From IMG/VR virus record IMGVR_UViG_3300036770_007539, positions 62,001 to 126,000 of that record: a stretch of 64,000 bases of DNA; one strand, written 5' to 3'. A program made the position numbers and the translations under genes. The notes below the pieces were generated by a model, which saw nothing but the letters and a program-made list of their open reading frames with translations, did no database searches and was not told the DNA's origin. Shown one piece after another: positions 4,147 through 25,283 of the stretch. Each line of letters begins with the position of its first letter. The first letter of the stretch is position 1.

Positions 4147-4689
4147 ATGAAAAATACTTTGGAGCGGGATCGTGAGCGTTGGTTCGTTAATTCGGCTATT
4201 CGAGTGCCAAAAGTCATTTGTATCAATTCAGATGACAAGAACTTAGGCGCTCTCATCACTAGGGATGCTTTGAAGCTTGCTCAAGAGCAAGGCTTGGATT
4301 TAGTTCAACTGAGCCCGCCATCAAAAGATAAGCCGCCCACTTGTAAAATTATGGACTTTAGCAAGTTTAAATATGAAACTTCTAAAAAGAAAAAAGAAGC
4401 TGATAAAAAGCAGCGAGAATCCATTGTCAAAGTTAAAGAAATTAAATTCAAACCAACTACAGGCGCTCACGATTTAGAGATTAAAGCTAAGCAGGCAGAA
4501 AAATTTCTTCAAGAAAACATCAAGGTTAAGATTGCTATTCTATTTGTTGGTCGAGCAATCACTCATCAAGAACTTGGCACTCAAACTCTTGAGCAATTTT
4601 TAAGCTTTCTTCCAGAAAATTCATTTAAAATTGATGGAAATATTTCTTGGGAAGGAAAAGAACTTACATTGATAATTATGAAGCCATGA
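4147..4689 (+). CDS. infC: translation initiation factor IF-3
   Basis: NSAIRVPKV, GLDLVQLS, PPTCKIMDFSKFKYE, VKEIKFKP, KVKIAILFVGRA. Confidence 0.95.
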   Translation: MKNTLERDRERWFVNSAIRVPKVICINSDDKNLGALITRDALKLAQEQGLDLVQLSPPSKDKPPTCKIMDFSKFKYETSKKKKEADKKQRESIVKVKEIKFKPTTGAHDLEIKAKQAEKFLQENIKVKIAILFVGRAITHQELGTQTLEQFLSFLPENSFKIDGNISWEGKELTLIIMKP

Positions 4690-5135
4690 TTCTTACAGAT
4701 GAAGAAACGGTAAGATCTTTAGGTCTTGCGGCTGAAGAAGTTTATAAGAATGAAATTGAAGATCTAAAAAGTATCTTAGAAAAAGAACTTCTTCTCTCTG
4801 AGAAGAGTGGAGTACCAGGAATAGGATTAGCATGCCCTCAAATTGGAATTCCTAAAAAAATGGCTATAATTAGAATGCCTGGAAAGACTTTTTTTTATGC
4901 AGATTTAGTCAATCCAGTTATTGAAGAGAAATATGATTTAAGTATATTTGATGGGGAGGGGTGCTTATCTTTTCCTGGTCTTTCTGGAAGAACTCAAAGA
5001 TACCAAGAAATAAAAGTAAAAAATTTACTAGGATTTCCTAAAAAATTTATTGCAACTGGATTGCCAGCAGTATGCATTCAACATGAAATAGATCATTTGC
5101 ACGGAATAGTACTGCCCGATTTAATTAAAGGATAA
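4686..5135 (+). CDS. def: peptide deformylase
   Basis: All three PDF motifs: GIGLACPQIG, EGCLS, QHEIDHLHG; ATGA overlap with infC stop. Confidence 0.95.
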   Translation: MILTDEETVRSLGLAAEEVYKNEIEDLKSILEKELLLSEKSGVPGIGLACPQIGIPKKMAIIRMPGKTFFYADLVNPVIEEKYDLSIFDGEGCLSFPGLSGRTQRYQEIKVKNLLGFPKKFIATGLPAVCIQHEIDHLHGIVLPDLIKG

Positions 5136-5136
5136 T

Positions 5137-5313
5137 ATGCAGAATAATAATGATAATTTACTTTTATTTAAAAATTTATTAATTGAAATGGCTGTGCGAG
5201 TAGCTACTTTAGAAAAAGTCTTATTAGATAAGGACCTCATCTCATTAGATGACTTATCATCTGCAGACGAAAAACTAAATAAAGAAATAACCAACATTAT
5301 TAATGAAAAATAA
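5137..5313 (+). CDS. small 58-aa hypothetical protein
   Basis: ATG 5137 to TAA 5313 fills the gap (MQNNNDNLLLFKNLLIEMAVRVATLEKVLLDK...); not in ORF track. Confidence 0.6.
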   Translation: MQNNNDNLLLFKNLLIEMAVRVATLEKVLLDKDLISLDDLSSADEKLNKEITNIINEK

Positions 5314-5569
5314 TATTACTTTAATATGTGAAAATTTAAAAAATAAAAAAATAAAAAATAAATTTTTTTCTTTAAAAAAAGAATTTTCTGAGATTGATTT
5401 TAAGATAATATCATATCATGAAGATGATTCTTTTGATCAAGATATTAAATTTCTTCCTTCCTGGGTTATAAGTATTAATAATACCACAGATATAGTGGAG
5501 GGTGATGTTTTAATATCTCCGCTAAGATCTTTAATAAAGAAAAAATTAAGAAAGGAAAGTTATGACTAA
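5303..5569 (+). CDS. hypothetical protein, weak thioredoxin-like pattern without CxxC
   Basis: DIKFLPSWVI resembles the cis-Pro strand of thioredoxin folds. Confidence 0.5.
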   Translation: MKNNITLICENLKNKKIKNKFFSLKKEFSEIDFKIISYHEDDSFDQDIKFLPSWVISINNTTDIVEGDVLISPLRSLIKKKLRKESYD

Positions 5570-5903
5570 GAAAAATGATACAACTACTGTTCAGGCAACG
5601 ACTTCCGAGTCAACCAAATCAGCGGCTTCGGAGGCTGATTTGCTTTGGGAGCAGATTAAAAAGACCCCAATTTCTTTATTTGGTATGGCTCCAAATTCAT
5701 TGGAGTCATTAGTAACTCGTGTTAATATCGCCCCTGACAAATTGCATTTAAGCGTTAAAGGTCCAGGTGCATCTGTATCTTTCATTGAAGACGCACTTAA
5801 TGTGCGCAGAGACAGTATGGGGTCAGAAGTTAGAGTTAATGGATTTGAAGTTGAATCCACCAATAACGGAATGCTAGTAATTAGCAAAGCATCATTTAAA
5901 TGA
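5562..5903 (+). CDS. hypothetical protein
   Basis: ORF with AAGGA RBS, in operon. Confidence 0.7.
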   Translation: MTKKNDTTTVQATTSESTKSAASEADLLWEQIKKTPISLFGMAPNSLESLVTRVNIAPDKLHLSVKGPGASVSFIEDALNVRRDSMGSEVRVNGFEVESTNNGMLVISKASFK

Positions 5904-5915
5904 TTTGAGCAGCCC

Positions 5916-7422: not shown

Positions 7423-7593
7423 ATGAATCTTACTAAATCTGATATTATAAATAAAATATCAGAAGAAAAATTACAATATTCAGATTATCTTAGATTATGC
7501 AAGAATTATCAGATAGATCCAGATCCGAAAGCCATAGCATATCATCAGGGTATGATTCAGGCTTTGAATCAGATTTTGATGTCTCTGGAATAG
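7423..7593 (+). CDS. small 56-aa hypothetical protein
   Basis: ATG 7423 to TAG 7593 (MNLTKSDIINKISEEKLQYSDYLRLCKNYQIDPDP...); not in ORF track. Confidence 0.55.
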   Translation: MNLTKSDIINKISEEKLQYSDYLRLCKNYQIDPDPKAIAYHQGMIQALNQILMSLE

Positions 7594-8186
7594 ATGATTT
7601 TTCTTATTTAAGACTATACTTAGAGTCTTCGAAAGAAGATTATAAAATAATTAATTATGTAAATTCGAAATCAGATTTAGTTAAGACTGCTAAGCAAAAT
7701 GGAGTTTTGCTGCAACCCACTAATAAAAATGACTGGGCATATAAAGCTAATTGTCCATTTCCAGATCATCGTGACTCCAGCCCATCTTTTAACATTAATA
7801 TTCAAACAAATACTTTCCATTGTTTTGGGTGCTCTAGAAAAGGCGGCACTTGCCAGTTTCTAGCTTGTCTGCATAAAAAACAAACAATTGAAATTGCAAA
7901 AGATTTACTTGCCAATAAGCAAGTTAAAATTGATGAGCTTGTCAAAGAAGCGCAGCAGTCGTATAATGATATTATCTCTCCTTACCTAGAGAGTTTTTCA
8001 GAGATTCATTTTAATTTTTTAAAAGATAATTCTTTCTCAGAAGAGGCTTTTGAATACGCTTCTAATGTTGCCCCTGTATTTGAACTATATGTAAAAAACA
8101 TATTGAAAAATAGCAACCTAGATATAGACTCTTTGAATCTAAGATTGGATTTCTGTAAGAGAAAATTTGAAGAATTTAATTTTTAA
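7497..8186 (+). CDS. CHC2 zinc-finger protein (primase Zn-binding domain without TOPRIM)
   Basis: CPFPDHRDSSPSF...FHCFGC. Confidence 0.85.
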   Translation: MQELSDRSRSESHSISSGYDSGFESDFDVSGIDDFSYLRLYLESSKEDYKIINYVNSKSDLVKTAKQNGVLLQPTNKNDWAYKANCPFPDHRDSSPSFNINIQTNTFHCFGCSRKGGTCQFLACLHKKQTIEIAKDLLANKQVKIDELVKEAQQSYNDIISPYLESFSEIHFNFLKDNSFSEEAFEYASNVAPVFELYVKNILKNSNLDIDSLNLRLDFCKRKFEEFNF

Positions 8187-8213
8187 ATTAATTATTTGCT
8201 ACTGGAGGATCAT

Positions 8214-9386
8214 TTGAAAGTTTTAATTGTGGGAGATGTTCATTTAGATAAGGGAACTTCTATTGGTAAGAATTATGGTCCAGGAAAATTAAATTCCAGA
8301 AATGAGGACAAGTTTAGATTGTTAAAATGGGTACAATCTAAAGCAATTGAATATAATGTAAAAAATGTAATTTTTACCGGAGATATTTTTGAGTCCTATA
8401 ATGTAGACAATGTTCTGGTTCAGCTTTTCTTTTCATATTTAAAATCGTATGAACAGTACGATATAAACGTTCATATTATTTTAGGTAATCATGATATAAA
8501 AAGAATTGGAAGCGAATATCACAGCGTATTAAACCTAATTAATATTGTAGAGCTTCCCAAATGCAAAGTTTACTCTGAAATTTTCACTCAAGAAGTTGAA
8601 GATGGATTTATTACATTCATTCCTTTTAGAGATAGAAAATCTTTAAACGCCGAGACTAATGCTGCTGCGTTAGATAAATTATCTGAATTACTACCTTCTA
8701 AGACTAGTTTTCCACATATTTGCGTGGGACACTTGACTTTAGAAGGTTCTTTATATGTTGGTGATGAAATTGATGATTTGCACAATGAGCTACATTGCAG
8801 TTCTGAAATGTTTTCTTCTAGGTTCAATGCGACTTTCATGGGACACATTCACAAGCCACAAATTAGAAATGAGAGCCCGCTAGTTTGTCATGTTGGGTCT
8901 TTGGATATTTCAGACTTTGGAGAAATGAATCATGATAAAATTGTTTATATTTATGATTCTTCTAGGGAGAATCCAATTAAGTTAGACGTTCCAACTAGAA
9001 ATCTAAGAAAATTAGAAGTCATTATTCCAGAAGAGGTAGACCCGACTCAATATTTGATTGATGTTCTCAGTAATGAAGAAGATAAAAAATCATTTTATGA
9101 TTCTATTCTTAATTTAGAATTAAAATTTCAAGATCCAAAACAAAAAATAGATGTAAAAAAAATAAATCAAACCTTAGAAAAATATTCAGTTCATAATTTA
9201 ACTGGAATTATTGAATCTAGAGCTAAAAGCGTTGTATCAACTGATAAAAGAAATAGCTTAACTTCATCGGTTTCTCCAAAAGATGCTTTTAAAGATTGGT
9301 TAGATTCGAGAGAGCTGACAGATGATAGAAAGTCAAAAATCATTCAACTTGCTAATGATATTATTGATGAGGCTATGAGCAAATGA
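8214..9386 (+). CDS. sbcD: SbcD/Mre11-like metallophosphoesterase nuclease
   Basis: GDVH, GDIF, GNHD, GH, GHIH motifs; TTG 8214 preceded by GGAGGA. Confidence 0.9.
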   Translation: MKVLIVGDVHLDKGTSIGKNYGPGKLNSRNEDKFRLLKWVQSKAIEYNVKNVIFTGDIFESYNVDNVLVQLFFSYLKSYEQYDINVHIILGNHDIKRIGSEYHSVLNLINIVELPKCKVYSEIFTQEVEDGFITFIPFRDRKSLNAETNAAALDKLSELLPSKTSFPHICVGHLTLEGSLYVGDEIDDLHNELHCSSEMFSSRFNATFMGHIHKPQIRNESPLVCHVGSLDISDFGEMNHDKIVYIYDSSRENPIKLDVPTRNLRKLEVIIPEEVDPTQYLIDVLSNEEDKKSFYDSILNLELKFQDPKQKIDVKKINQTLEKYSVHNLTGIIESRAKSVVSTDKRNSLTSSVSPKDAFKDWLDSRELTDDRKSKIIQLANDIIDEAMSK

Positions 9387-11551
9387 ATCCACTGAAATTA
9401 TCAGTTAAAAATTTTATGACTTATAGAGAGGCAGATATTGATTTTTCAAAATTTGATTCCGCCTTAGTCTTAGGTCAGCACAATGGAGATTTGTCCTTAT
9501 CCAACGCTGCTGGCAAATCTACCATTTTCAGAGCCATAAAATATGCTTTATTTGGAACTTATGACGTATCTACAATAGATAGAATTGTTAGACGAGGAGA
9601 GAAAAAATGTATTGTTGAATTTGAATTTGAAATAGATTCAATTCAATATAAAATATTTAGAGCTAGAACAAAAGGGTCCTCTACATTAGAGTTTTATCAG
9701 AAAATCAATGATCAATGGGTATCTAAAAGCAGCAATACTAACTCTAATATTGAATCCGAAATATCCAAATTATTGTCATTAAATGACAATGCCTTTCATA
9801 ACATTTATCTTTTTTCGCAAAAAGATCATTTGCACGGCTTCTTGTCTGCCAAGAATCCAAAAGAAAGAATTGAAATTATTAAGAATGCTTTATTGTTATC
9901 TATTTATTCAAGATTAGAGCAGGCTGCCAAAGAAAAAATCTCAGAAATAAACAAAGAGATAACTATCTTAAATGCCAAGATTGAATCTTTAGAAAATCCA
10001 ATCGAACACAAAGAAGAAGTCATAAAAAAACTACAAATTACTCAATCTATTTTAGATTCTAAAATATCTGATAAGCACAACATTTTAGAAAAATTAAATT
10101 CTTTAAATCAAGAATTAAATATTTTAGAATCTTCTTTAGATAAATCTGTAGAAGATATGCTTAAGCAGGTAAAGCAATTTCAGTCAGAGTCTGAAACAGT
10201 TAAAACTAAACTTTCTTCTTCAGAAGATAAGAAGAGCAGAAAATTTAATGAAAAACAAAAATCTTTAAAAGACTCTCAAGAACTGATTAATTTAATAAAT
10301 AAATATAATTTAGAGTTAAAATCTTATTTAGATTTATCTTCTTTTGATAAGAATGAATTAAAAGAAGAGCTTCAATCTTTATTTAAAGAGGAGTCCGATT
10401 TAAAAGCTAAAGTTATATCTAATAATACAAGGCTAAATCAATTAAAGAACCCGCTCCCAGAAGACGAAGTTTGTTCCGAATGTTTTCAAACAATCACAGA
10501 AGAATATAAAAATTGTCATTTAGAAAAAGTCTCTAAAGAATTACAAATATTAAATGAAGAAAATAAGCAGTATAATCTAAAATTAGAAAAGATTCAAAAT
10601 AAAAAAAATGATGCAAATAATAAAATTGCAAAAACAGATGAAAGATCTAAGCTAATTAATGAGACTGAACAAAAAATAAAAAATTTAAAAGAAAAAGAAT
10701 CTTCTTGCGCTCAAAACCGAGAATCGATTGAAGAATTTATTTCTTTAATAGACAAAGAAATTCAATCATTTAATGAAACATTAAATTCTTTGCAAGAAAA
10801 AATTTCATTATTAAATGATAAAATTTCTAAAAATATAAATAAAGATGTTTCTGAAAAAATTAAAAACATTAAAGAAAAAATTAACATTGCTAATGAGCAA
10901 ATAACTGCACTAAATGGATCTATTTTGACTGGAACTAATAATCTTGCCATTTTAAAAGATAAAATAGAACTTGCAGATAAAAATATTTTAAAATTCAACG
11001 CTTTTATTTCTTCTAAAAAATCTTTAGAAGATTCTTTGAATGACTATCAAGTTATTGCACAGGGATTTTCTCCTACTGGAACACCTAACAGAATTATTTA
11101 TAACATTTTAGATTTGTTTCAGAGCAATACAAACATCTGGCTAAGTAAAATTAAACCAGGACTAGAAATACAATTCATTATAACAAAAGATAAAAAGGGC
11201 AAAGAAGAAGATACTTTTGATATAAAGTTTTTTGAAAACTCTTTAGAGTTAGATGCTTCTGAGTTATCAGGGGGTCAAGAATTTGTTATTCGATGGGCGC
11301 TAAAAATGGGTCTTAAAGATACCGTAGAGAATGGTGTTCCAAAATTTAAGCTTCTTTGCTTTGATGAAATTGATGAAAGATTAGATGAAGCATCTTCCTC
11401 TGCTTTCATTTCAATAATCAAAGAACTAGAAAAAGACTATAAGGTTTTAGTTATTACTCATAAAGACAAATTAAAAGAAAAATTTAATAATGCTATTATC
11501 GTAAATAACGAAGGTCAATTAGGCTCTATAGCGAAGGTAATATCTGTATGA
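9383..11551 (+). CDS. sbcC: SbcC/Rad50 SMC-like ATPase
   Basis: Walker A NAAGKST, coiled coil with CSEC hook, LSGGQ signature, FDEID Walker B, ITH. Confidence 0.92.
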   Translation: MNPLKLSVKNFMTYREADIDFSKFDSALVLGQHNGDLSLSNAAGKSTIFRAIKYALFGTYDVSTIDRIVRRGEKKCIVEFEFEIDSIQYKIFRARTKGSSTLEFYQKINDQWVSKSSNTNSNIESEISKLLSLNDNAFHNIYLFSQKDHLHGFLSAKNPKERIEIIKNALLLSIYSRLEQAAKEKISEINKEITILNAKIESLENPIEHKEEVIKKLQITQSILDSKISDKHNILEKLNSLNQELNILESSLDKSVEDMLKQVKQFQSESETVKTKLSSSEDKKSRKFNEKQKSLKDSQELINLINKYNLELKSYLDLSSFDKNELKEELQSLFKEESDLKAKVISNNTRLNQLKNPLPEDEVCSECFQTITEEYKNCHLEKVSKELQILNEENKQYNLKLEKIQNKKNDANNKIAKTDERSKLINETEQKIKNLKEKESSCAQNRESIEEFISLIDKEIQSFNETLNSLQEKISLLNDKISKNINKDVSEKIKNIKEKINIANEQITALNGSILTGTNNLAILKDKIELADKNILKFNAFISSKKSLEDSLNDYQVIAQGFSPTGTPNRIIYNILDLFQSNTNIWLSKIKPGLEIQFIITKDKKGKEEDTFDIKFFENSLELDASELSGGQEFVIRWALKMGLKDTVENGVPKFKLLCFDEIDERLDEASSSAFISIIKELEKDYKVLVITHKDKLKEKFNNAIIVNNEGQLGSIAKVISV

Positions 11552-12462
11552 AAATTATAGCTTTAGCTGGCAGGAAAGGAAGCGGAAAGTCTACACTGTC
11601 TAATTATTTAGTTGCAAATGAAAATTTTACAAAATTTTCATTTGCAGATTATTTAAGAGAATTAATTATAGATGTTTTTTTAATAGATAAAAAATATTTT
11701 GAGCAATCTTTCAAAGAAACAGAACTTTTAAATATTTGTACCAATCAGGATTTTTATAAAAAAATATCAGATTATATTAAGGAAGATGTTACTTATCTTC
11801 AAGGAGAGGAAATTATAATTAAAACTCCAAGACAGTTGCTACAATTTATTGGAACAGACGTATTGCGTCTGCATGATATTAATTTTCACGTTAAAAAAAC
11901 CTTATTAAAAATACAAAACAGTACCAAAACTAATTTGGTTTGTGATGATCTTAGATTTTATAATGAGCTATTAGGTCTTAGAACTTTAAATGTAGAAGAG
12001 TATTTTGTAATTAGACCAAATAATTGGAACATTTCCAACCATTCTTCAGAAAAATCTCTTAAATGGCACAATATAAAGAATATAATTATTAATAATTGTA
12101 ATATTCATGCTTTGATGAATGCTTTTAAGAATCGCTTAGGTTCAAAAGATGACAGTTTTAGCCAAATAATTCGAGAAAAATCTAATGAACATTCGGATTA
12201 TCAATTCGATACGGAGCATTCTACGTCTAAAGATGCTTTTATTGGGGGATTTATTTGTCAGCATAAATTGTTAAATAATCTTTCCGAGTTGGAATTATTA
12301 TCTATAAAAAATCACTTGAGTAATCTTTCTAAGGACACTGACTATATTTATAATAATTTTAAATTAGAAAATTTAAAACAATGGCTGGATGTTAAATTTC
12401 CCCCAGAAGTTAATTTAACATCTTGGGAAGAAGGGATGATTTATTATAAATCAACGGTTTAA
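11548..12462 (+). CDS. deoxynucleoside monophosphate kinase with C-terminal extension
   Basis: AGRKGSGKST, FSFADYLR, RQLLQFIGTD, DDLRFYNE, HSSE. Confidence 0.85.
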   Translation: MKIIALAGRKGSGKSTLSNYLVANENFTKFSFADYLRELIIDVFLIDKKYFEQSFKETELLNICTNQDFYKKISDYIKEDVTYLQGEEIIIKTPRQLLQFIGTDVLRLHDINFHVKKTLLKIQNSTKTNLVCDDLRFYNELLGLRTLNVEEYFVIRPNNWNISNHSSEKSLKWHNIKNIIINNCNIHALMNAFKNRLGSKDDSFSQIIREKSNEHSDYQFDTEHSTSKDAFIGGFICQHKLLNNLSELELLSIKNHLSNLSKDTDYIYNNFKLENLKQWLDVKFPPEVNLTSWEEGMIYYKSTV

Positions 12463-16587: not shown

Positions 16588-19500
16588 AAGATTTTGTTTC
16601 TTTTCACAATCACACCACATATTCAGTATTAGATTCTTTAATTAGACCAAGAGATCTTTTTTATAGAGCCAAAGAATTAGGTCAGTCTGCAATTGCTGTA
16701 ACCGATCACGCAACTTTGGCTGCTGCGCATGATTGCCTTCATGCTAGTAAGGAGACTGGCGTAAAACTAATTATGGGGTGTGAATTTAATTTTGTAGATG
16801 ATTTAAATTCTACAAATAAAAATGATAGATGGCGACATGTGATTCTTTGCGCCAAAAATTATAATGGATATAAGAACCTTTTAAAACTAAGTAGAGAAGC
16901 AAACAATTATAATGTTATTGCTTTCAAAAAGACATTTCCTAGAATTGATTGGTCTTTGCTAGAAAAATATTCTTCTGATTTAATTTGTACCACAGCTTGT
17001 GCTGGTGGAATACTTGGTCAATTAATCAATACCAGGCAAATTGAAACTGCTAAACTTCAAGCTAAAAGATTGAAGTCTATTTTTGAAGACGACCTTGCCT
17101 TGGAAATTCAACCTCACGCTTTAAAAAGACAAATTAGTACGATGAATGATTATATTGACCAGACTTTGGTTAATAACATCTTAATTAAGATCGGTAAAGA
17201 ATTAGATATTAAAGTCATTCCAACAACAGACGCTCATTATCTTTACAGAGAAGATGCGGAGGCGCATGATGTGGAGTTGGCTATTGGCTCAGGTCAGCCA
17301 GTTGAATCAAATAATAGATTACGTTACTATAATACTAGCGATAGCTCTCTTCATTCTGAGTTTTATATGAAATCTCGGGATGAAGTTGTTTCTTTCTTTT
17401 CTCGTCTCTATAAGGAAAAAGCAGATGAATGGGCAGACAACACTCTATACTTTGCTGAAAAATGTGAATTTCCAAACTGGATTGACCCAGCCTTTACCAA
17501 TCCTTCTAAACGAGAACTTCCAGATTTTCCAGTAAAAGATCAGCCTGATTATAAGAAATTTCTTGTTTGGAAGCACGAGCATCTTGAAAAAGAATGTCCA
17601 GAAGACGAGGCATATCTTAGATATGTTGTATATTCAAATCTTGATTCTAGAGCTAAAATGCCAAATATTGAAGCATATAAAGCCAGAATTGAAGATGAGT
17701 TTGAAGTTATTGCAGGTAAGAAATTCAATAGTTATATGTTAATTGTGGCGGATATTTTAGATTTCTGTCGCAAGAATAATATTTCTACTGGCTATGGTCG
17801 AGGCAGTGCCGGTGGAAGTTTAATTGCTTATCTTGCTAGAATTCACGAAGCAGACCCTCTAAAATATAACTTAATTTTTGAACGATTCCAAAATCGTGAA
17901 AAAACGGCTATGCCCGATATCGATCTTGATTTCTCCAAGCGAAATCGAGAAAAGGTTCTTGAATATATTTATAAAAAATATGGCAATGAATACGTGGCTC
18001 AAATTGCCAACTATATGGAATTGACGCCTAAGCCATATGCTAGAGCCATTTCAAGAGTTTATAAACTGGGCGGAGACTTTAAATCTGCTGTTAAGATAGG
18101 TAATGAAATTGCAGGCGCAATTCCAGATGATATTCATAAAGTATCTGATTTGATAGATAATGCACCCCTATATGCTGAATATAGCAAATTCTATCCACAA
18201 TTAGCCAAGAGTTCTCAAAAACTTGGAAATATATTTGCTGCTTTTTCTAAGCATGCAGCAGGGTTGGTTATTGGAAAAAGAAAGCTTGAAGAAATTGTAC
18301 CATTACGTATAGATAAAGAAGGCTTTATTGTTCTTGAATATGAAAAAGAGCGAGCCGAAGCCAATGGATTAGTTAAGATGGATATTCTTGGTCTTGAGAC
18401 TTTGGATATTATTGATGACTGCTTTGAGTTAATTAAAAAACAAGGTAAGCCATTACCATCCGAGCCTTTTGACTTTGAAATGTATGATGAAAAGACTTAT
18501 GATTTGATTGCTTCCGGAAATACTTTTGCTGTATTCCAGCTTGGAACTTCAGGGGCAACCATGGATCTTTGCAGGAAGATTAAGCCTAAATCCATTCTTG
18601 ATTTAGCTCTAATCAATGCCTTAGCACGACCTGCCACCGCTGATATTAGGGATGAGTTTTCAAAGGTGCGAAATGGGGAGAAGCCAATGGAGTTATTGCA
18701 TCCTTCATTGCAAAGAGCTTTCGGATTTACCTATGGTTTTGGTCTTTTCGAAGAATCTCTTATGTTCTTAGCTCAAGATGTTGCAGGTTGGACTCTTAAT
18801 GAAGCTGATGCCTTGCGAAAATTGACTAAAGAAAAAGGTAAAAATCCTGAGAAGGCAGCAAAATTACGTAAAAACTTTATTGATAAATCAGTGGAAAATA
18901 ATATTGATGTAAGTATTGCTACTACAGTGTGGGATGATGTAATTTCTAAATTTTCTGGGTATGGGTTCAATTTGAGCCACGCTGTATTTTATTCCTTTCT
19001 AGGATTCAAGACAGCCTATCTAAAAGCTCACTATCCATTAGAGTTTCTTACCGCCAACTTAATTGCGGAAGCTAATTCCAATGCTAAGAACGCTCCTGAT
19101 AATATTCTTAAAATCAAGCAAGAACTTCGCTCATCAGGTGTAAAAGTTCTACCTCCTGATATTAATAAATCTGAAATGACCTATAATATCATTGACGATA
19201 ATACATTGCTAACGGGTTTTGATTCATTAAAATTTATGAGCAATGATGCCATTCCAGAGATTATTGCTCATCGTCCATATAACTCTTTTGAAGATTTTAT
19301 GAGAAAAGTCAGCGCCAAGAAAGTTAAGATTAATAGTGTTTATGCTTTGATTGGATCTGGTTGCTTTGATTGTTTTGGCATGAGTCGTAAGCAAATGTAT
19401 TTATACGCCGCTGATTACAGAAAGAAGCTATCACTTTATCTGTCCAGGGCAGAAGATGCAACCCAGCCTTTTAACTATCCTTTTCCAGAGGTTGGAGATT

Positions 19501-20195
19501 TTACTATTCCAGAAAAAAATGCATTTGAAATTTTTTATTTAGGGGAAGGATTAACTGGGACGCCATTTGAAATTTATCCTGAATTTTTTGATAAGTCGTC
19601 TGTAAATTTTGCAAATCTTGCTAAAGACTTTCCAGACAAAGAAGAAAATGGTTTTTCAGTAGATATCCCATCTGGATATGGATATCTTCAAGGAATTATT
19701 GAAAATTATTTTACTTTTAAGATTAAAAAAGAAACTTCTAAAAATTTTGGAAGAGAAATGGGAAAGATCTCTTTAAGAGATCCTTTTGGTAATTCTATTG
19801 CTCTGACATTATTTCCGGATGAATTAGAAAACTTTAAAAAAGATATCAGAAAAGTCATGGGCTCTAAATTTGTGATAGAACCTGGAGTGGCAATTAATTT
19901 TGCAGGAGGGTTAAATTGGTATGAGGGATCTCCTAGCTTAATTCTTAAACAGTTAAGAAAAATTGCAGGTATACCTCAAAAACCATCTAAGGATCAATTA
20001 AAGCCACAGAAAGTCAATTTAAAAATTGCTAACTCTAAAAAGAAAAAATCAACTACTATGATGGAATTTTTAGATGAAATTAATGAGGAATTAGAAGAGA
20101 ATGGAATTGTTGAAAATCAAGATTTAGAAAAAAATGATCTATTAGATATAGATGAGTTATCTGAGTTTCAGGCGCCAGAAGACAACGACGATTAA
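16584..20195 (+). CDS. dnaE: DNA polymerase III alpha subunit (family C)
   Basis: PHP motifs HNHTTYS, TDH, DAHY; GRGSAGGSL; PDIDLDF; KHAAG; KMDILGL; YGFNLSH; LPPDINKS; no intein. Confidence 0.97.
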   Translation: MKDFVSFHNHTTYSVLDSLIRPRDLFYRAKELGQSAIAVTDHATLAAAHDCLHASKETGVKLIMGCEFNFVDDLNSTNKNDRWRHVILCAKNYNGYKNLLKLSREANNYNVIAFKKTFPRIDWSLLEKYSSDLICTTACAGGILGQLINTRQIETAKLQAKRLKSIFEDDLALEIQPHALKRQISTMNDYIDQTLVNNILIKIGKELDIKVIPTTDAHYLYREDAEAHDVELAIGSGQPVESNNRLRYYNTSDSSLHSEFYMKSRDEVVSFFSRLYKEKADEWADNTLYFAEKCEFPNWIDPAFTNPSKRELPDFPVKDQPDYKKFLVWKHEHLEKECPEDEAYLRYVVYSNLDSRAKMPNIEAYKARIEDEFEVIAGKKFNSYMLIVADILDFCRKNNISTGYGRGSAGGSLIAYLARIHEADPLKYNLIFERFQNREKTAMPDIDLDFSKRNREKVLEYIYKKYGNEYVAQIANYMELTPKPYARAISRVYKLGGDFKSAVKIGNEIAGAIPDDIHKVSDLIDNAPLYAEYSKFYPQLAKSSQKLGNIFAAFSKHAAGLVIGKRKLEEIVPLRIDKEGFIVLEYEKERAEANGLVKMDILGLETLDIIDDCFELIKKQGKPLPSEPFDFEMYDEKTYDLIASGNTFAVFQLGTSGATMDLCRKIKPKSILDLALINALARPATADIRDEFSKVRNGEKPMELLHPSLQRAFGFTYGFGLFEESLMFLAQDVAGWTLNEADALRKLTKEKGKNPEKAAKLRKNFIDKSVENNIDVSIATTVWDDVISKFSGYGFNLSHAVFYSFLGFKTAYLKAHYPLEFLTANLIAEANSNAKNAPDNILKIKQELRSSGVKVLPPDINKSEMTYNIIDDNTLLTGFDSLKFMSNDAIPEIIAHRPYNSFEDFMRKVSAKKVKINSVYALIGSGCFDCFGMSRKQMYLYAADYRKKLSLYLSRAEDATQPFNYPFPEVGDFTIPEKNAFEIFYLGEGLTGTPFEIYPEFFDKSSVNFANLAKDFPDKEENGFSVDIPSGYGYLQGIIENYFTFKIKKETSKNFGREMGKISLRDPFGNSIALTLFPDELENFKKDIRKVMGSKFVIEPGVAINFAGGLNWYEGSPSLILKQLRKIAGIPQKPSKDQLKPQKVNLKIANSKKKKSTTMMEFLDEINEELEENGIVENQDLEKNDLLDIDELSEFQAPEDNDD

Positions 20196-20209
20196 ATTGG
20201 AGATTTTAT

Positions 20210-20881
20210 ATGAAATGCATGAATTGCACTGCGGAAATTTTACCACAATACGTTCATTCTATTGCAAATAATATGTGCCCAGGCTGCGGCGAAGCAATAT
20301 ACGACGATCAAACAAAAGATCTTTACAACGAATTAAAAGAGGCTATGCTCAGAATGCCCAACGATCCCGTTGGTCTTGCAGGCTGGCTACTAGACAATTA
20401 TAAGCTTCATAAGATCGGCTCTGCCGAACCTGTCTCTAAGTTTTATAATAGCTCTTTAAAAGAAGAGTCATATAAAGAGTCAAAAAATAAAACTGCATCT
20501 GTTGAAAAAACCCATGAATTCTTTCAAAGAGCAGGAGTTTCGCCTCAAATCAAAGGTAAACCTTCAAAAGATTATAGTTCTTTAGTGGAGCAAATCAATA
20601 ATGATATTGATGGCATGTATGGCGATGATGAAGTTGAAATGGTTTCAGAGTTTTCAGAAGAAGACAATATAATTGCTGCCAAATCTATGAATGCTAAATT
20701 TGCAGAAGAAGAAATTTTATTACCAGGAAAGCCTTTGGCTCGCCATGAAATGAAAGAATTAAAAAATTTAATGAGTAAGAATAATTCAAAAGCAGAAGTC
20801 ATTCTAGAAAATGAAAGAATGGAAAAACTTCAAAGGCAAGAAAATATGCTTTCCGGAGGGGGCGGCTTTAAAAGAGCATGA
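20210..20881 (+). CDS. zinc-ribbon protein
   Basis: CMNC...CPGC at the N-terminus. Confidence 0.7.
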   Translation: MKCMNCTAEILPQYVHSIANNMCPGCGEAIYDDQTKDLYNELKEAMLRMPNDPVGLAGWLLDNYKLHKIGSAEPVSKFYNSSLKEESYKESKNKTASVEKTHEFFQRAGVSPQIKGKPSKDYSSLVEQINNDIDGMYGDDEVEMVSEFSEEDNIIAAKSMNAKFAEEEILLPGKPLARHEMKELKNLMSKNNSKAEVILENERMEKLQRQENMLSGGGGFKRA

Positions 20882-21210
20882 TTAGAATCATAGATAATAA
20901 AAAAATAGATTTAACAGAATCGGAACATCAATTGTATCAAGAAATATGCAAAGCATATGATACAACTACTTTTCAAGGAAAAGATTTATTTAAGGGTCTT
21001 TTTGAAACTAACGATGATGGCGTTATTATTTTTTTAAAACCATCCAATAAACCCTATGCCAGTATGGAAGTTTTCTTATTTTTAATTTCCGTAATGGTGC
21101 ATCAGCACTTGCGTCAAAGCACACAGCAATTTGATCTTTTAATGGAAGATGCTCGTCGAGTTATTGACGAAGCCAAAACAGTTATTTTAGAATTAAAAAA
21201 CAAAGGATAA
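20878..21210 (+). CDS. hypothetical protein
   Basis: ATGA-coupled ORF. Confidence 0.7.
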   Translation: MIRIIDNKKIDLTESEHQLYQEICKAYDTTTFQGKDLFKGLFETNDDGVIIFLKPSNKPYASMEVFLFLISVMVHQHLRQSTQQFDLLMEDARRVIDEAKTVILELKNKG

Positions 21211-21216
21211 TTTATT

Positions 21217-21624
21217 ATGGAACAAAGAAACATTGAAAGCCTGGTAGAATTTGTATTGAACCAGGTTCAGGCGGTCCAATCTGGAACTTTCGAAGTTATT
21301 AAATCTGATGTTGTTGCAGCCGCTTCTTTAGAAGCCCAGCTTCTATTGGCAGACATTTTGTCATCTGCAGAATTTGAAGTAAAACAGAGAGAAAATGATT
21401 TGGATTTTTTGGAAGCAGAACTGGCTACTAATATTAGGACAGAGAATAGAGAGAAAAAAATTACTGAAGCTCAGGTTAAAGAGCTAATCAGTAGCAAGTC
21501 CGAAGTTAGAGAAGCCAGAAACAACTCAGCAGTAGCTCATAAAGAGTTTAAGAAGTGGCAATATATTTTTAACACGTTAAAAGATTCTCATATCTTTTTT
21601 AGAAACTTGAACAAAACACAATGA
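21217..21624 (+). CDS. UvsY-like recombination mediator (putative)
   Basis: Helical 135 aa with KKITEAQVKELI; directly upstream of recA. Confidence 0.5.
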   Translation: MEQRNIESLVEFVLNQVQAVQSGTFEVIKSDVVAAASLEAQLLLADILSSAEFEVKQRENDLDFLEAELATNIRTENREKKITEAQVKELISSKSEVREARNNSAVAHKEFKKWQYIFNTLKDSHIFFRNLNKTQ

Positions 21625-21663
21625 TGCGCCAGCAGGCTTAAAAGCATCCAAAGGAGATAAATA

Positions 21664-22641
21664 ATGGTAACAAAAAATAGTAGCACTTCCCCTACTTCGA
21701 AATTAAAATTTGATATTAGCGCATTAGTAGATAAAGCTAGGGGAATATACGGAAAATCAGACGCTGGCTTAGCCAAGCAAATTTCATCTGGCTCAAACAT
21801 TGTGCGAGCCGACAAAGACACGGATTTTGTTCTTTGGTCAAAAGGAGACCATTGGCAAAAATTAACTGGAACCAAAGGTATTCCATTTGGAAAAATTGTA
21901 CAAATTGCCGGAAAGCCAGACTCGGGCAAAAGCACACATGCAATGTGCTTTATGGCAGAAGCTCAAGAGCAAGGTGTATTAGTTATTCTTTGGGATGCTG
22001 AAGGTAAATTTTCTCAAAGACGCTATGACTCTAAAATGGGCGGCAATTCTAATGAATTGCTAGTCGTGCAAACTAATTCTATCCAAGATGGAGTCATGCA
22101 CGTCGCTAATACAATTCATGCGGCTAAACAATTAGATCCTAATGTTAAAGTTTTAATTGTTTGGGATAGCGTAGGTGCTTCTTTGAATTCAAAAGAAGAC
22201 TCCGAGGAAACTGAAGAAGCATCTAATCAGCCAGGCGTAGACGCCAGAGATATTGCTAAAGCAGTTAAGAAATTGAATAAAACCATGTTTCGATATTTCA
22301 ATAAAGAAACAGGCGAGCATTCAGTAGCTTGCTTAGTGGTCAATCAGGTTTATGCTAACATTGGGTCAGTGGGAACCAAAGAAAAAGGTGGAGCCCAGCT
22401 AGAATACCTTTCTAGCTTGATTTTAAACTTGACTCGAAAATCCGACTTGACAAAAACCCGTGGAGGAATTAAAGTCAAGCATGGGATTGTTTCTCGTGCC
22501 AAGGTTAAAAAGAACCATCTTTTTGATGGAGATGATTGTGTGTCAGAATTAGAACTTGAAGTTTCAGCATCTGGAATTCGTTTGTTTGGCAAAGGAAAGA
22601 AAGATGATGATGGAGATCTTCTTGAAGAAGAAGATGATTGA
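21664..22641 (+). CDS. recA: RecA/UvsX-like recombinase
   Basis: GIPFGKIVQIAGKPDSGKST, WDAEG, VWDSV, VNQVY, GGAQLEY, VKKNH. Confidence 0.9.
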   Translation: MVTKNSSTSPTSKLKFDISALVDKARGIYGKSDAGLAKQISSGSNIVRADKDTDFVLWSKGDHWQKLTGTKGIPFGKIVQIAGKPDSGKSTHAMCFMAEAQEQGVLVILWDAEGKFSQRRYDSKMGGNSNELLVVQTNSIQDGVMHVANTIHAAKQLDPNVKVLIVWDSVGASLNSKEDSEETEEASNQPGVDARDIAKAVKKLNKTMFRYFNKETGEHSVACLVVNQVYANIGSVGTKEKGGAQLEYLSSLILNLTRKSDLTKTRGGIKVKHGIVSRAKVKKNHLFDGDDCVSELELEVSASGIRLFGKGKKDDDGDLLEEEDD

Positions 22642-22661
22642 TAATTAAAGGCAAATAATAT

Positions 22662-23003
22662 ATGAGTGAAAATAAAGATCCGGCTTTTATTAAAGCCTCA
22701 GCTTTATCTGAAGTAGATAAGAAACTATCAGATCCAAATGCTAATAAACATTTGCACCTGATATCCATAGAAGATCCTTATCATAAGACAAAAGAACGCT
22801 CTTTCTTTACGTACAATTTAGACAAGAGTAATTTTGGATTAGAATTTAAAGGATTTGAAATAGACAAGAAGGCAATTGGTCAAGTAAAAACATGGACAGA
22901 AGCACTGAAGTATGCTGAATCAAAAAAGATCGAAATGATCAGTTTATTTATACCATGGCATCGAGTTGTCAAAGTCCAAAATCTATCATATAGACCTAAA
23001 TGA
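22662..23003 (+). CDS. hypothetical protein
   Basis: ORF track. Confidence 0.7.
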   Translation: MSENKDPAFIKASALSEVDKKLSDPNANKHLHLISIEDPYHKTKERSFFTYNLDKSNFGLEFKGFEIDKKAIGQVKTWTEALKYAESKKIEMISLFIPWHRVVKVQNLSYRPK

Positions 23004-23025
23004 ATAAATAACAAGGAGATAAATT

Positions 23026-23739
23026 ATGTCAGAAGAAAATCAATCTTACGGTTTTGTATCATGGGACGATCTAAAATTTTCATCAAAAGATGGAAAGAAA
23101 AGTTATGAAAATAAAGAAAGTGATTATTTTAAATTGGAGGCAGGGGTAAATACAGTTCGTATTCTCACATCTCCCGCTCCTTATAGCTTCCATAATTGGA
23201 AGCCAGAGGGTGACAATGTAGATCAGAAAAAAGCTAGTAAATGGGGATATACCGTTCGCTGCTCTAAAATGCACGGGTCTTGCCCACTGTGTAAGTCAGG
23301 AAACAAGCCAAAGCAAAAATTTCTAATGGCTGTTCTTGTAAAAGAAGTAGAAGCAAAGTCAGATCACAAAGATAAAAATAAAATCAAATTGCTTGATGCT
23401 TCGCCTGCAATTGCCAAAGACCTTAAAACTCTTAACGATAATAAAAAATGGGGAAATCCTTTCCGATACGATGTTGATATCGTAAAGAACCCTGATGCAG
23501 ATCCAAATAATTATTATTCAGTAACTCCATCTGGTCCACCAGAGCCTCTTTCGGAATCTGAAATGTCAATGAAGGCTTCATGGGATGATAAGACCCTGAC
23601 TCGCCACTTGGTCATTCCAACTCCAGCACAAGTAGAAGAGCAAATGGAAAGAATTATGAAGAAAATTGCCGTAGATGGTAATGCACCAGTCAAAAAAGAA
23701 GCAGCTGATGGAGATGATGATTTTCCATCGGTAGATTGA
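23026..23739 (+). CDS. phage ssDNA-binding protein (gp32-like)
   Basis: FKLEAGVNTVRIL, C-x3-H-x2-CPLC, YDVDI, acidic tail DDDFPSVD; AAGGAG RBS. Confidence 0.75.
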   Translation: MSEENQSYGFVSWDDLKFSSKDGKKSYENKESDYFKLEAGVNTVRILTSPAPYSFHNWKPEGDNVDQKKASKWGYTVRCSKMHGSCPLCKSGNKPKQKFLMAVLVKEVEAKSDHKDKNKIKLLDASPAIAKDLKTLNDNKKWGNPFRYDVDIVKNPDADPNNYYSVTPSGPPEPLSESEMSMKASWDDKTLTRHLVIPTPAQVEEQMERIMKKIAVDGNAPVKKEAADGDDDFPSVD

Positions 23740-23764
23740 TAAAATAAAAAAAGCATATTAATAA

Positions 23765-23804
23765 ATAACAAAGGGATGCGATTAATTTCGCATCCCTTTG
23801 TTAT
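23765..23804. terminator. 17-bp perfect hairpin after ssb (probable intrinsic terminator)
   Basis: ATAACAAAGGGATGCGA-ttaatt-TCGCATCCCTTTGTTAT. Confidence 0.75.
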
Positions 23805-23817
23805 ATTTAAGGATAAT

Positions 23818-24429
23818 ATGCCAAGAATTTTAGGATTAGACGCAAGCACTAGCACGATAGGAATCTGCGTGTTAGACTTCACTTTGGATGGTAAGTTTGA
23901 TTTAATTTTAGCTAATTATTATAAGCCGCCAAAGAAAGGTCATCCTATAGAAAAATTAGCAATGACCAAGATGGCAATTGAAAAAATTATTGAAAAATAT
24001 AACCCTGATCATATTGCACTAGAAGATATCATTTTGTTCATGAAAGGCAAGAGCACTGCAAAAACCACTACTAGTCTAGCTGCTTTAAATAGAACCGTAG
24101 GTCTTGCAGTTTATGAAAAAACCACACGACCTCCCACGTTATTGAACGTCTTAACGATTAGACATGCTATTAAAATAAGAGAAGTTCCAGACAAAGAAAA
24201 AATACCAGAAACAGTTGCTGAAAGATTGCAGATCCAATTTCCTTGGATTTTAAATAAAAATAATAAGCCCATACCTGAAAATTATGATATTGCAGATGGA
24301 ATGGCGGTGGCGTTAGCATATGCATGTCTTGTCATAAATAATGATGGTAAATTTCCTCTAGATAAAGAATCTAGTATTAAGAAGGAAAAAAAGAAAAAGA
24401 AAAAGAAACAATTGCCAAAGAGTAAATAG
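23818..24429 (+). CDS. ruvC: RuvC-like Holliday junction resolvase
   Basis: ILGLDAS, IALED, DIADGMAVA; ATG 23818 with AAGGA RBS. Confidence 0.85.
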   Translation: MPRILGLDASTSTIGICVLDFTLDGKFDLILANYYKPPKKGHPIEKLAMTKMAIEKIIEKYNPDHIALEDIILFMKGKSTAKTTTSLAALNRTVGLAVYEKTTRPPTLLNVLTIRHAIKIREVPDKEKIPETVAERLQIQFPWILNKNNKPIPENYDIADGMAVALAYACLVINNDGKFPLDKESSIKKEKKKKKKKQLPKSK

Positions 24430-24431
24430 CT

Positions 24432-25283
24432 ATGAATTATAAAAAGGCTCTTGAATTATTAGAATTAACCGAGGGCTTTACTGAAGACCAATTAAAAAAA
24501 CAATTTAGAAAATTAGCTGCCAAATATCATCCAGATATCAACAAAAGCTCTGATGCAGAGAAAAAATCAAAAGAAATTTCCGAAGCTTATAATTTTTTAA
24601 AAGATCCTAAAAACTGGAATATACCATCAAACAGATCTACTAACCCGGCTGGGTATCATACTGTTAAAGTTAATATTTCAAGAAATAAACATAAAACCGT
24701 AAATATTGATGATTTATTTTCTGCAATAAAAATGAATTTTTTTAATGTACCTTCGAAAACAATAAAAGTCTCTTTAAGAGATGCGATTTTGGGGTGCAAT
24801 GTCAAGACCAGTGTTGATTGGATAGAATCATGTGCCGAATGCCCAAAGGACAATTCTAAATGCCAACGATGCAATGGCACAAAGCAGGTCAAAAGATCTG
24901 GTAATTGGAATTTAACTTTAATTCCAGGTATTCAACATAATACTACTATTACTTTAGATAGAATTATTAATAATAAAAATTATAAATTTTCTTTTGTAAT
25001 TTTAGTAGACGAGGACCCTAACTGCACTCGCCAGGGAAATGATATCTTTATTAAAAGGCAATTTTCTTTATTAGATGTTTTGCGAGGCGGAAAGTTTGAA
25101 CTGGATACATTTACTAAAAAAATTCAGTTTAATTTAAATCCTGGAACTAAAAACAATGATTTAGTTATAGTTAAAGATAGCGGTCTTCCTAACCATGGAC
25201 ACTATAAAATTATAGTCTTGGTTGATTACCCTAAAGACATAGATAAGTTAATTAATTTCTTAGAGCAAAGTCAAGGTACTTAA
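24432..25283 (+). CDS. dnaJ: DnaJ-family co-chaperone
   Basis: J-domain with YHPD, partial Zn finger CAEC/CQRCNG, C-terminal domain RQGNDI...PGTKNND. Confidence 0.85.
   Translation: MNYKKALELLELTEGFTEDQLKKQFRKLAAKYHPDINKSSDAEKKSKEISEAYNFLKDPKNWNIPSNRSTNPAGYHTVKVNISRNKHKTVNIDDLFSAIKMNFFNVPSKTIKVSLRDAILGCNVKTSVDWIESCAECPKDNSKCQRCNGTKQVKRSGNWNLTLIPGIQHNTTITLDRIINNKNYKFSFVILVDEDPNCTRQGNDIFIKRQFSLLDVLRGGKFELDTFTKKIQFNLNPGTKNNDLVIVKDSGLPNHGHYKIIVLVDYPKDIDKLINFLEQSQGT

What the first reader, a model, noticed from the sequence alone, without database searches (positions are those of the whole stretch)
4147..25283. Phage-encoded nascent-chain pipeline: IF3, deformylase, trigger factor, DnaJ
Seen: infC and def are coupled by ATGA; a full three-domain trigger factor keeps the ribosome-binding loop (GYRPG versus canonical GFRxG); DnaJ has an intact HPD. 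Established: IF3 acts at initiation, PDF and trigger factor act at the ribosomal exit tunnel, and DnaJ feeds DnaK. A phage trigger factor is much less familiar than phage PDF. Inference: a coordinated take-over of initiation, N-terminal maturation and folding, possibly serving the many large virion proteins.
Basis: partly seen in the sequence, partly recalled or inferred. Interest (0 to 1): 0.6.

Follow-up and report, generated by a model that had tools for sequence, protein, structure and literature searches.

The report
Huge-phage trigger factor and proteostasis genes
A roughly 300-450 kb phage lineage carries its own ribosome-exit chaperone (trigger factor) together with IF3, peptide deformylase and DnaJ; these are real, inherited phage genes scattered through the replication gene block, not one operon.

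Summary
All four genes are present as described. IF3 is at 4147-4689. Peptide deformylase (PDF) is at 4686-5135, overlapping infC by ATGA. A three-domain trigger factor (TF) with a GYRPGTAP loop is at 14753-15994. DnaJ with an intact HPD is at 24432-25283. The contig is a 301-kb IMG/VR virus record with terminase and portal genes in the same window.

Chimeric assembly is excluded. Three per-run assemblies span the TF stretch with no mismatches. The gene order PD-(D/E)XK nuclease, TF, DnaE also recurs in relatives whose TF is only 24-36% identical.

Phage-type TFs form one strongly supported group apart from the bacterial TFs sampled. At least 141 clusters (50% identity) match at E<=1e-30. In 12 large relatives, PDF and DnaJ occur in 12 of 12, IF3 in 10 of 12 and Hsp70 in none. 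S21, ClpP and methionine aminopeptidase are also widespread and occur in this genome outside the window.

The "pipeline" is therefore a conserved lineage trait, but only infC-def are physically coupled, and only in one sub-lineage. No expression or functional data exist.

IF3 and PDF are already known from huge phages.

The parts
4147..4689 (+). infC: translation initiation factor IF3 (180 aa, ATG start)
   Evidence: Pfam IF3_N 86.6 bits and IF3_C 82.2 bits. Phage relatives are 47-88% identical; the nearest named bacterial IF3s are about 41-46% identical.
4686..5135 (+). def: peptide deformylase (149 aa). Its start overlaps the infC stop (ATGA). It has no C-terminal tail.
   Evidence: Pfam Pep_deformylase 100.9 bits. 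Motifs GIGLACPQ, EGCLS and HEIDH are intact. The overlap is visible. The same 4-nt overlap occurs in two diverged relatives, L050 and L056.
14753..15994 (+). tig: phage-type trigger factor (413 aa). N-terminal ribosome-binding domain with GYRPGTAP, FKBP-like middle domain, C-terminal arm domain.
   Evidence: Pfam Trigger_N and Trigger_C. Clade profile against 1w26, E=2e-49. AlphaFold model pLDDT 87.2. Foldseek 1w26_A TM 0.74. The motif is conserved across the clade.
24432..25283 (+). dnaJ-like J-protein (283 aa): J domain with HPD, half zinc finger (2 CxxC), DnaJ C-terminal domain
   Evidence: Pfam DnaJ 58 bits and DnaJ_C 52.3 bits. Alignment with 11 relatives. The same 2-CxxC form occurs in L033, whose TF is 66% identical.
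7497..14708 (+). Conserved upstream block: DnaG zinc ribbon (7497-8186), SbcD (8196-9386), SbcC (9383-11551), dNMP kinase (11548-12462), small ORF (12546-12869), CHB_HEX_C-domain protein (12874-13833), PD-(D/E)XK nuclease (13830-14708)
   Evidence: Pfam. The same gene order lies upstream of TF in L002-L004, L071 and L072.
15991..24429 (+). Conserved downstream block: two small ORFs, DnaE-type Pol III alpha (16584-20195), RecA (21664-22641), RuvC (23776-24429)
   Evidence: Pfam. The same order occurs in relatives.
35619..40706 (+). Phage hallmark genes on the same contig and strand: large terminase (35619-37487) and portal (38952-40706). A minus-strand ORF (37492-38799) lies between them.
   Evidence: PHROG terminase large subunit E=1e-64 and portal E=1.1e-51. 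Pfam GpA_ATPase.

Best explanation
The window is part of a huge phage from a subsurface metagenome. The contig is 301 kb and CheckV rates it 71% complete; near-complete relatives are 394-448 kb. The lineage carries a vertically inherited set of translation and protein-quality-control genes.

Inside the window:
- IF3.
- A tail-less peptide deformylase, translationally coupled to infC.
- A complete trigger factor.
- A DnaJ-type J-protein.

Elsewhere in the same genome: ribosomal protein S21, ClpP and methionine aminopeptidase.

Most likely mechanism (inferred from the families, not shown here):
1. The phage TF docks on host ribosomal protein uL23 at the exit tunnel through its conserved G-[FY]-R-x-G loop and cradles nascent phage polypeptides.
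2. PDF, followed by methionine aminopeptidase, processes their N-termini.
3. IF3 and S21 bias or sustain initiation.
4. DnaJ hands clients to host DnaK, because the phage encodes no Hsp70.
5. ClpP degrades proteins.

The genes are conserved individually and lie dispersed in the early replication/recombination gene array. Only infC-def form a coupled pair. 'Pipeline' therefore describes a shared functional theme, not a transcription unit.
For: Phage identity: the contig is an IMG/VR virus record, with terminase and portal in the window.

Not chimeric: three per-run assemblies each hold 13800-19700 in one contig with 0 mismatches and even depth of 46-75x. A fourth sample from 2018 covers most of the stretch in short pieces at low depth, and none of the listed pieces has a mismatch.

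Deep conservation of TF at one genomic position: the order SbcD, SbcC, dNMP kinase, CHB_HEX, PD-(D/E)XK, TF, DnaE is seen in contigs whose TF is 36%, 35%, 32%, 26% and 24% identical. A scan of IMG/VR found 33 viral contigs with the gene, up to 447 kb.

Size and separateness of the TF clade: 141 representatives (50% identity clusters) match at E<=1e-30. Phage-type TFs fall on one side of a branch with SH-aLRT 100 in two trees.

TF function: G44 and R46 are invariant and the signature loop is conserved. All three domains are equally conserved, 0.37-0.42 mean identity. The protein matches E. coli TF over its full length by profile and by fold.

Co-occurrence in 12 large records: PDF 12, DnaJ 12, IF3 10, S21 11, ClpP 11, methionine aminopeptidase 9, IF1 5, Hsp70 0. 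S21, ClpP and methionine aminopeptidase in this genome were confirmed by Pfam.

PDF catalytic motifs and the DnaJ HPD are conserved in relatives.
Against: There is no expression, binding or activity evidence. No RNA run holds the sequence.

The TF N-domain with E. coli uL23 complex test gave no answer.

The four genes are not contiguous, and IF3 is missing from 2 of 12 records, one of them 97% complete.

The host is unknown, so the fit of the phage TF to the host ribosome is untested.

The window's TF has L where E. coli TF has F198, the PPIase active-site residue. This was read by eye, so PPIase activity is uncertain.

The bacterial TFs in both trees are limited samples, so the donor and the root of the phage clade are unresolved.

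The 'phage' label for most clade members rests on tree membership. Context was checked for 5 proteins and for the 33 IMG/VR loci.
Confidence: 0.75

Rival explanations
1. The chaperone genes serve DNA replication and recombination rather than nascent-chain folding. In phage lambda, host DnaJ/DnaK remodel the P-DnaB complex at the origin. By analogy, the phage DnaJ (and perhaps TF acting off the ribosome as an assembly chaperone) would help assemble or recycle the phage replisome. That would explain why both genes sit among DnaE, RecA, RuvC, SbcCD and primase.
For: TF lies between the PD-(D/E)XK nuclease and DnaE. DnaJ lies between RuvC and the primase core. This placement is conserved down to 24% TF identity. 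TF has a solved off-ribosome assembly role with ribosomal protein S7 (PDB 3gty, the top fold hit). The lambda precedent is from my own knowledge.
Against: The ribosome-docking loop is the most conserved feature of the phage TFs. Strict conservation would not be expected for a purely off-ribosome role. Phage gene arrays group genes by timing as much as by function. PDF, IF3, S21 and methionine aminopeptidase co-occur with them and have no replication role.
Confidence: 0.12
2. The phage TF is an antagonist rather than a helper. It would outcompete host TF, SRP or the host's processing enzymes at uL23, shutting down host protein maturation or membrane targeting, or reserving ribosomes for phage mRNAs.
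For: The phage TF clade has a long stem and is only about 20-25% identical to bacterial TFs. One relative carries a 32-residue lysine-rich insert in the docking loop (P0023), which suggests altered ribosome contacts. That TF overproduction is toxic in E. coli is from my own knowledge.
Against: The substrate-cradle C-domain and the FKBP domain are as conserved as the docking domain. A mere blocker would not need them. No direct evidence exists.
Confidence: 0.08
3. Artefact: the genes are cellular DNA joined to a phage contig by misassembly, or a recent non-functional pick-up from the host.
For: TF matches in the cultured-phage collection are of this kind. OR844993.1 is an UNVERIFIED_ORG record carrying the bacterial operon tig-clpX-engB-hemA.
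Against: Composition is uniform and one strand is used throughout. Independent assemblies agree. Synteny is conserved in dozens of viral contigs. The nearest bacterial TFs are at most 27% identical.
Confidence: 0.01

Closest known systems
Bacterial trigger factor (E. coli Tig, PDB 1w26/2vrh)
   Same: Same three-domain order, similar length (413 against 432 aa) and the same signature docking loop. The full-length fold matches at TM 0.74 and the profile at E=2e-49.
   Different: It is encoded by a phage and belongs to a separate deep clade, about 20-25% identical to bacterial TFs. Its neighbours are DNA-metabolism genes rather than clpP-clpX. The loop has Y for F in this sub-lineage, and the residue equivalent to PPIase F198 is L.
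Translation genes of huge phages (Al-Shayeb et al. 2020, PMC7162821)
   Same: The paper reports IF1, IF3, S21 and PDF as huge-phage genes that redirect host translation. Its supplementary genomes BM_PHAGE_CIR_35_55 (437,772 bp), SR-VP_PHAGE_40_16 and PPR-W_PHAGE_36_0 carry auto-annotated 'Trigger factor' and DnaJ CDS 7-12 kb apart. They cluster in the paper's trees with an IMG contig from sample 3300010403, the sample of my relative G007.
   Different: The main text never mentions trigger factor, DnaJ or chaperones. The clade-wide conservation, the synteny and the separate TF clade are not described there.
Cyanophage peptide deformylase (Frank et al. 2013, cited as reference 21 in PMC7162821)
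   Same: A phage-encoded, catalytically intact PDF. From my own knowledge it lacks the C-terminal helix of E. coli PDF, as the 149-aa PDF here does.
   Different: Here def is translationally coupled to infC. Sister lineages replace that arrangement with a separate def carrying a SecA-type SEC-C zinc tail.
Phage-encoded chaperones and co-chaperones (T4 gp31 co-chaperonin, phage EL GroEL-like protein, RB43 J-domain protein Rki; from my own knowledge)
   Same: Phages supplement or redirect host folding machines. A J-protein without its own Hsp70 must recruit host DnaK.
   Different: Those act after translation. A ribosome-docked, co-translational chaperone of phage origin has not been described in the literature I could search.
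bS21-encoding phages (Chen et al. 2022, PMC9723584)
   Same: [quoted passage not shown] DnaJ appears in their supplementary annotation.
   Different: No trigger factor, PDF or IF-3 was found in the supplementary text held, one file of which was cut when stored. In those phages S21 sits next to capsid genes. Here it sits about 5 kb upstream of infC in the early array.

Membership tests
Trigger factor (Tig) | N-terminal ribosome-binding domain with the GFRxGxxP signature loop | tested here: met
   Trigger_N 80 bits, over profile positions 1-139 of 144. GYRPGTAP at residues 44-51. G and R are invariant in 34 clade members.
Trigger factor (Tig) | Central FKBP-type PPIase domain | tested here: met
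   Pfam FKBP_C did not reach threshold on this protein. The clade profile matches the TF PPIase domain 1l1p at E=1e-11. The model's middle domain matches FKBP and SlyD structures. Many clade members carry PF00254.
Trigger factor (Tig) | C-terminal helical arm domain forming the cradle; overall fold | tested here: met
   Trigger_C 46.5 bits. Full-length Foldseek match to 1w26_A, TM 0.74/0.71.
Trigger factor (Tig) | Binds the ribosome at uL23 | tested here: inconclusive
   The complex test with E. coli uL23 returned 'no answer' (score 0.02), which counts neither for nor against binding. It needs biochemistry.
Trigger factor (Tig) | PPIase catalytic residues | tested here: inconclusive
   The position equivalent to E. 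coli F198 is L in the window protein and F in most clade members (read). Activity cannot be judged from sequence.
Peptide deformylase | Three metal-binding and catalytic motifs: GxGxAAxQ, EGCLS, HExxH | tested here: met
   GIGLACPQ, EGCLS and HEIDH are present. Pfam 100.9 bits. The motifs are conserved in 10 relatives.
Peptide deformylase | C-terminal ribosome-anchoring helix of type 1B enzymes | tested here: not met
   The protein ends 11 residues after the HEIDH motif. Eight relatives carry a SEC-C zinc tail instead.
IF3 | IF3_N and IF3_C domains joined by a lysine-rich linker | tested here: met
   Both domains are above their cut-offs. The linker runs from about residue 75 to 95 and is rich in K.
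IF3 | Non-canonical AUU start used for autoregulation in bacteria (from my own knowledge) | tested here: not met
   The ORF starts with ATG. Relatives use ATG, GTG or TTG.
Class A (type I) DnaJ/Hsp40 | J domain with the HPD tripeptide | tested here: met
   DnaJ domain 58 bits. HPD at residues 33-35. It is conserved in all 11 relatives.
Class A (type I) DnaJ/Hsp40 | Four CxxCxGxG repeats forming two zinc centres | tested here: not met
   The window protein has only two CxxC motifs. The L033 relative shares this form, whereas more distant relatives have four.
Class A (type I) DnaJ/Hsp40 | Partner Hsp70 (DnaK) and GrpE encoded alongside | tested here: not met
   HSP70 was found in 0 of 12 records, including four that are at least 92% complete. 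GrpE gave only a sub-threshold 14.9-bit match.

The most novel reading that the evidence does not exclude
Phage-type trigger factors are an ancient, virus-specific branch of the TF family, held at one genomic position throughout a large group of huge phages. Together with phage PDF (free, coupled to infC, or carrying a SecA-like SEC-C zinc tail), methionine aminopeptidase, S21 and IF3, they would re-equip the host ribosome's initiation site and exit port with virus-made factors. That would amount to a virus-specified 'exit-tunnel complex' tuned to the phage's many very large proteins.
Probability: 0.3. Interest if true: 0.75.

Novelty: new member of a known kind. Interest (0 to 1): 0.55.

Why it matters
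Phages are known to bring or borrow post-translational chaperones (GroES and GroEL homologues, J-proteins) and, in huge phages, initiation and elongation factors. A ribosome-docked co-translational chaperone would extend viral control to the moment a chain leaves the tunnel.

The phage TF clade is large, old and syntenic. This makes it a clean natural experiment on which TF features are indispensable: the docking loop, the FKBP domain and the arms are all retained.

It also offers cloneable proteins for testing whether a virus can re-specify the ribosome exit site. The two alternative PDF designs, infC-coupled or SEC-C-tailed, suggest different ways of placing PDF at the ribosome.

Tried and rejected
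1. Complex prediction of TF residues 1-115 with E. coli uL23 gave 'no answer' (0.02). It is not evidence either way.
2. The promoter and terminator consensus scan of 3500-23400 was uninformative. Promoter-like sites (75) were fewer than in shuffles (85), and the terminator-like hits were mostly inside genes. No transcription units could be drawn.
3. The search for related loci with alignment A1 in genome contigs failed for lack of a usable conserved stretch. GTDB genomes were therefore not scanned for phage-type TF.
4. Host hint: the nearest named bacterial IF3s are Myxococcota/'Deltaproteobacteria' and Persephonella at 41-46% identity. I consider this too weak to name a host; the phage's 35% G+C also fits poorly with Myxococcota, which from my own knowledge have high G+C. 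Al-Shayeb's gene-taxonomy profile for a clade member was also indecisive, with Proteobacteria 4.2% against Firmicutes 3.0% of genes.
5. No RNA runs hold the sequence, so expression could not be examined.
6. TF matches in the cultured-phage collection turned out to be short unannotated faecal contigs, or bacterial DNA in an UNVERIFIED_ORG record.
7. The first word-based search suggested a score gap between phage and bacterial TFs. The exhaustive search filled that gap with more phage-type TFs, so I dropped the 'gap' argument in favour of the tree split.
8. No ClpX partner for ClpP was found; AAA_2 matches were weak.

Full report
**1. What is in the sequence**

The window is bases 62001-126000 of a single 301,007-bp contig. 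IMG/VR holds it as a linear virus record that CheckV rates 71% complete. It has 35% G+C and five tRNA genes.

Nearly all ORFs in the window lie on the + strand with small gaps, and composition is even. A large terminase (35619-37487, PHROG E=1e-64) and a portal (38952-40706, E=1.1e-51) lie downstream.

All four genes of the finding are confirmed by Pfam above curated cut-offs:
- IF3: 4147-4689.
- PDF: 4686-5135.
- Trigger factor: 14753-15994.
- A DnaJ-type protein: 24432-25283.

The infC stop and def start share ATGA at 4686-4689. PDF keeps GIGLACPQ, EGCLS and HEIDH. TF carries GYRPGTAP. DnaJ carries HPD.

**2. Trigger factor is complete**

Pfam did not call an FKBP domain on this protein. A 34-member profile of its relatives (A1) aligns from end to end with E. 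coli TF 1w26 (E=2e-49) and with the isolated TF PPIase domain 1l1p (E=1e-11).

An AlphaFold model built on A1 has pLDDT 87.2. It matches 1w26_A over its whole length (TM 0.74/0.71), and its middle domain matches FKBP and SlyD structures.

Within the phage clade the N-domain, linker, PPIase domain and C-domain are equally conserved, with mean pairwise identity of 0.40, 0.40, 0.42 and 0.37. The docking loop G-[FY]-R-x-G-x-x-[PST] is kept almost throughout, and G44 and R46 are invariant.

**3. It is phage DNA and not a chimera**

The source is a subsurface metagenome. Three per-run assemblies each hold 13800-19700 (nuclease, TF, DnaE) in one contig with no mismatch and flat depth. A fourth, earlier sample covers most of the stretch in short pieces at low depth, and none of the listed pieces has a mismatch. 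These runs come from one study and may include the source sample.

Independent support comes from synteny. Contigs of 344, 327 and 204 kb, whose TFs are 36, 35 and 32% identical, show the same gene order: PDF, thioredoxin, primase Zn ribbon, SbcD, SbcC, dNMP kinase, CHB_HEX protein, PD-(D/E)XK nuclease, TF, two small ORFs, DnaE, then RecA, RuvC and DnaJ. Two contigs whose TFs are only 26% and 24% identical keep the same core. A scan of IMG/VR returned 33 viral contigs with the gene, eight of them 327-448 kb.

**4. A large, separate TF clade**

The word-based search found about 60 relatives at 30-79% identity, followed by bacterial TFs at no more than 27%. The exhaustive search found 141 representatives (50% identity clusters) at E<=1e-30, with a continuous fall in score.

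Two trees were built:
- 34 phage-type and 28 bacterial TFs.
- 57 phage-type and 27 bacterial-type rows. The 27 were 23 bacterial TFs plus four weak hits of the exhaustive search that grouped with them.

In both, all phage-type TFs fall on one side of a branch with SH-aLRT 100. The root and the donor are not resolved, because the bacterial rows are a limited sample.

**5. The gene set across the lineage**

Twelve large records were searched: this genome and 11 relatives, four of which are at least 92% complete. The number of records carrying each family was:

| Family | Records (of 12) |
|---|---|
| PDF | 12 |
| DnaJ | 12 |
| IF3 | 10 |
| S21 | 11 |
| ClpP (mostly two copies) | 11 |
| Methionine aminopeptidase | 9 |
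| IF1 | 5 |
| Hsp70 | 0 |

In a subset of five records, GroES occurred in 2 and Hsp20 in 3, and no clear ClpX was found.

This genome has ClpP at about 53.1 kb and S21 at about 60.8 kb, the latter about 1 kb before the window. Methionine aminopeptidase lies at about 216 kb. All three were confirmed by Pfam. GroEL, EF-Tu and DnaK were not found, and GrpE gave only a sub-threshold match.

It is nonetheless a lineage trait of separate genes.

**6. Arrangement**

The infC-def 4-nt overlap recurs in two diverged relatives: ATGA in L050 and GTGA in L056. There too the PDF is tail-less, at 145-149 aa. In eight other relatives def lies 13-25 kb from infC and ends in a SecA-type SEC-C zinc motif.

DnaJ in most relatives has four CxxC motifs. 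The window's protein and that of L033 (TF 66% identical) have two, so this is a sub-lineage state and not a one-off lesion.

**7. Literature**

No paper in the searchable library links trigger factor to jumbo or huge phages, or names a phage trigger factor.

Al-Shayeb et al. 2020 describe IF1, IF3, S21 and PDF in huge phages but do not mention TF, DnaJ or chaperones in the text. Their supplementary GenBank files carry auto-annotated 'Trigger factor' CDS in 11 of the first 200 files. Clear members of this clade are among them, with DnaJ 7-12 kb away. Examples are BM_PHAGE_CIR_35_55 (437,772 bp) and SR-VP_PHAGE_40_16 (426 kb).

JGI also auto-names clade members 'trigger factor'. The gene is thus visible in databases but unanalysed.

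The only TF match in a named cultured-phage record examined is bacterial DNA, carrying tig-clpX-engB-hemA in an UNVERIFIED_ORG entry.

**8. Interpretation**

Shown:
- The genes are present, intact, phage-borne and co-conserved.
- TF has the full architecture and the docking loop.

Inferred from the families:
- TF docks at uL23 and shields nascent phage proteins.
- PDF and methionine aminopeptidase mature N-termini.
- IF3 and S21 act at initiation.
- DnaJ recruits host DnaK.
- ClpP degrades proteins.

Not shown:
- Expression timing, ribosome binding or any coordination beyond infC-def.
- Any link to the 13 open frames of 800-2229 aa in the genome.

Rival readings are given with their tests: a replication-chaperone role suggested by the gene neighbourhood, and an antagonist of host exit-site factors. 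Misassembly is excluded.

**9. Verdict**

This is a new, well-populated viral member of known kinds: the trigger factor family and the auxiliary translation and proteostasis genes of huge phages. It is of moderate to good interest, chiefly because a conserved phage-encoded co-translational chaperone has not been discussed in print and is directly testable.

Noticed in passing
L059-L067 (relatives G001-G007, G010, G011); compare window 4686-5135: In eight relatives PDF ends in a SecA-type SEC-C zinc motif (C-x-C-G-S ... K-K-[YF]-K-K-C-C) and is not next to infC. In the window and two other relatives PDF is tail-less and overlaps infC by 4 nt. These look like two alternative designs, possibly two ways of tethering or co-producing PDF at the ribosome.
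   Followed up: partly
window 24432-25283; L033 19691-20539: The DnaJ of this sub-lineage has lost about 35 residues of the zinc-finger domain, leaving 2 of 4 CxxC motifs. It keeps the J domain and the C-terminal domain.
   Followed up: partly
G000 outside the window: about 53,074-53,670 (ClpP), 60,753-61,088 (S21), 215,924-216,673 (methionine aminopeptidase): Further proteostasis and translation genes of the same phage. S21 lies only about 1 kb upstream of the window start and carries a C-terminal extension beyond the S21 domain (111 aa).
   Followed up: yes
L002 10001-11404 (protein P0023, 344-kb contig): This relative's TF has a 32-residue lysine-rich insertion inside the ribosome-docking loop, with K in place of the invariant R. 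The same contig encodes an EF-Tu.
   Followed up: no
window 47797-52398: A 1533-aa ORF contains an intein with a LAGLIDADG homing endonuclease at about residues 108-483. The identity of the extein is unclear; there are weak PHROG hits to head proteins and protease. Relatives carry inteins in DnaE instead (L003, L071, L072), whereas the window's DnaE has none.
   Followed up: no
window 7497-8186 and 25608-26399: The DnaG primase appears to be split into two ORFs 17 kb apart: a CHC2 zinc-ribbon ORF and a catalytic-core plus Toprim ORF.
   Followed up: no
L049 (G010:193600-195050): A second J-domain protein in one relative is fused to a region that looks like a protein kinase (H-G-V-I-H-G-D-I-K-P motif).
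   Followed up: no
window 636-1822: An MT-A70 family adenine methyltransferase is followed by an HNH endonuclease, just upstream of the region.
   Followed up: no
window 56840-58231: The last 44 residues or so of this 463-aa ORF match the C-termini of five unrelated-length PHROG families of unknown function. This may be a shared C-terminal module.
   Followed up: no
L068 (OR844993.1 125109-134161): The record named 'Staphylococcus phage SA 1306 Kay' (UNVERIFIED_ORG, 163 kb) carries tig-clpX-engB-hemA. This is bacterial chromosomal DNA, so it should not be counted as a phage trigger factor.
   Followed up: yes
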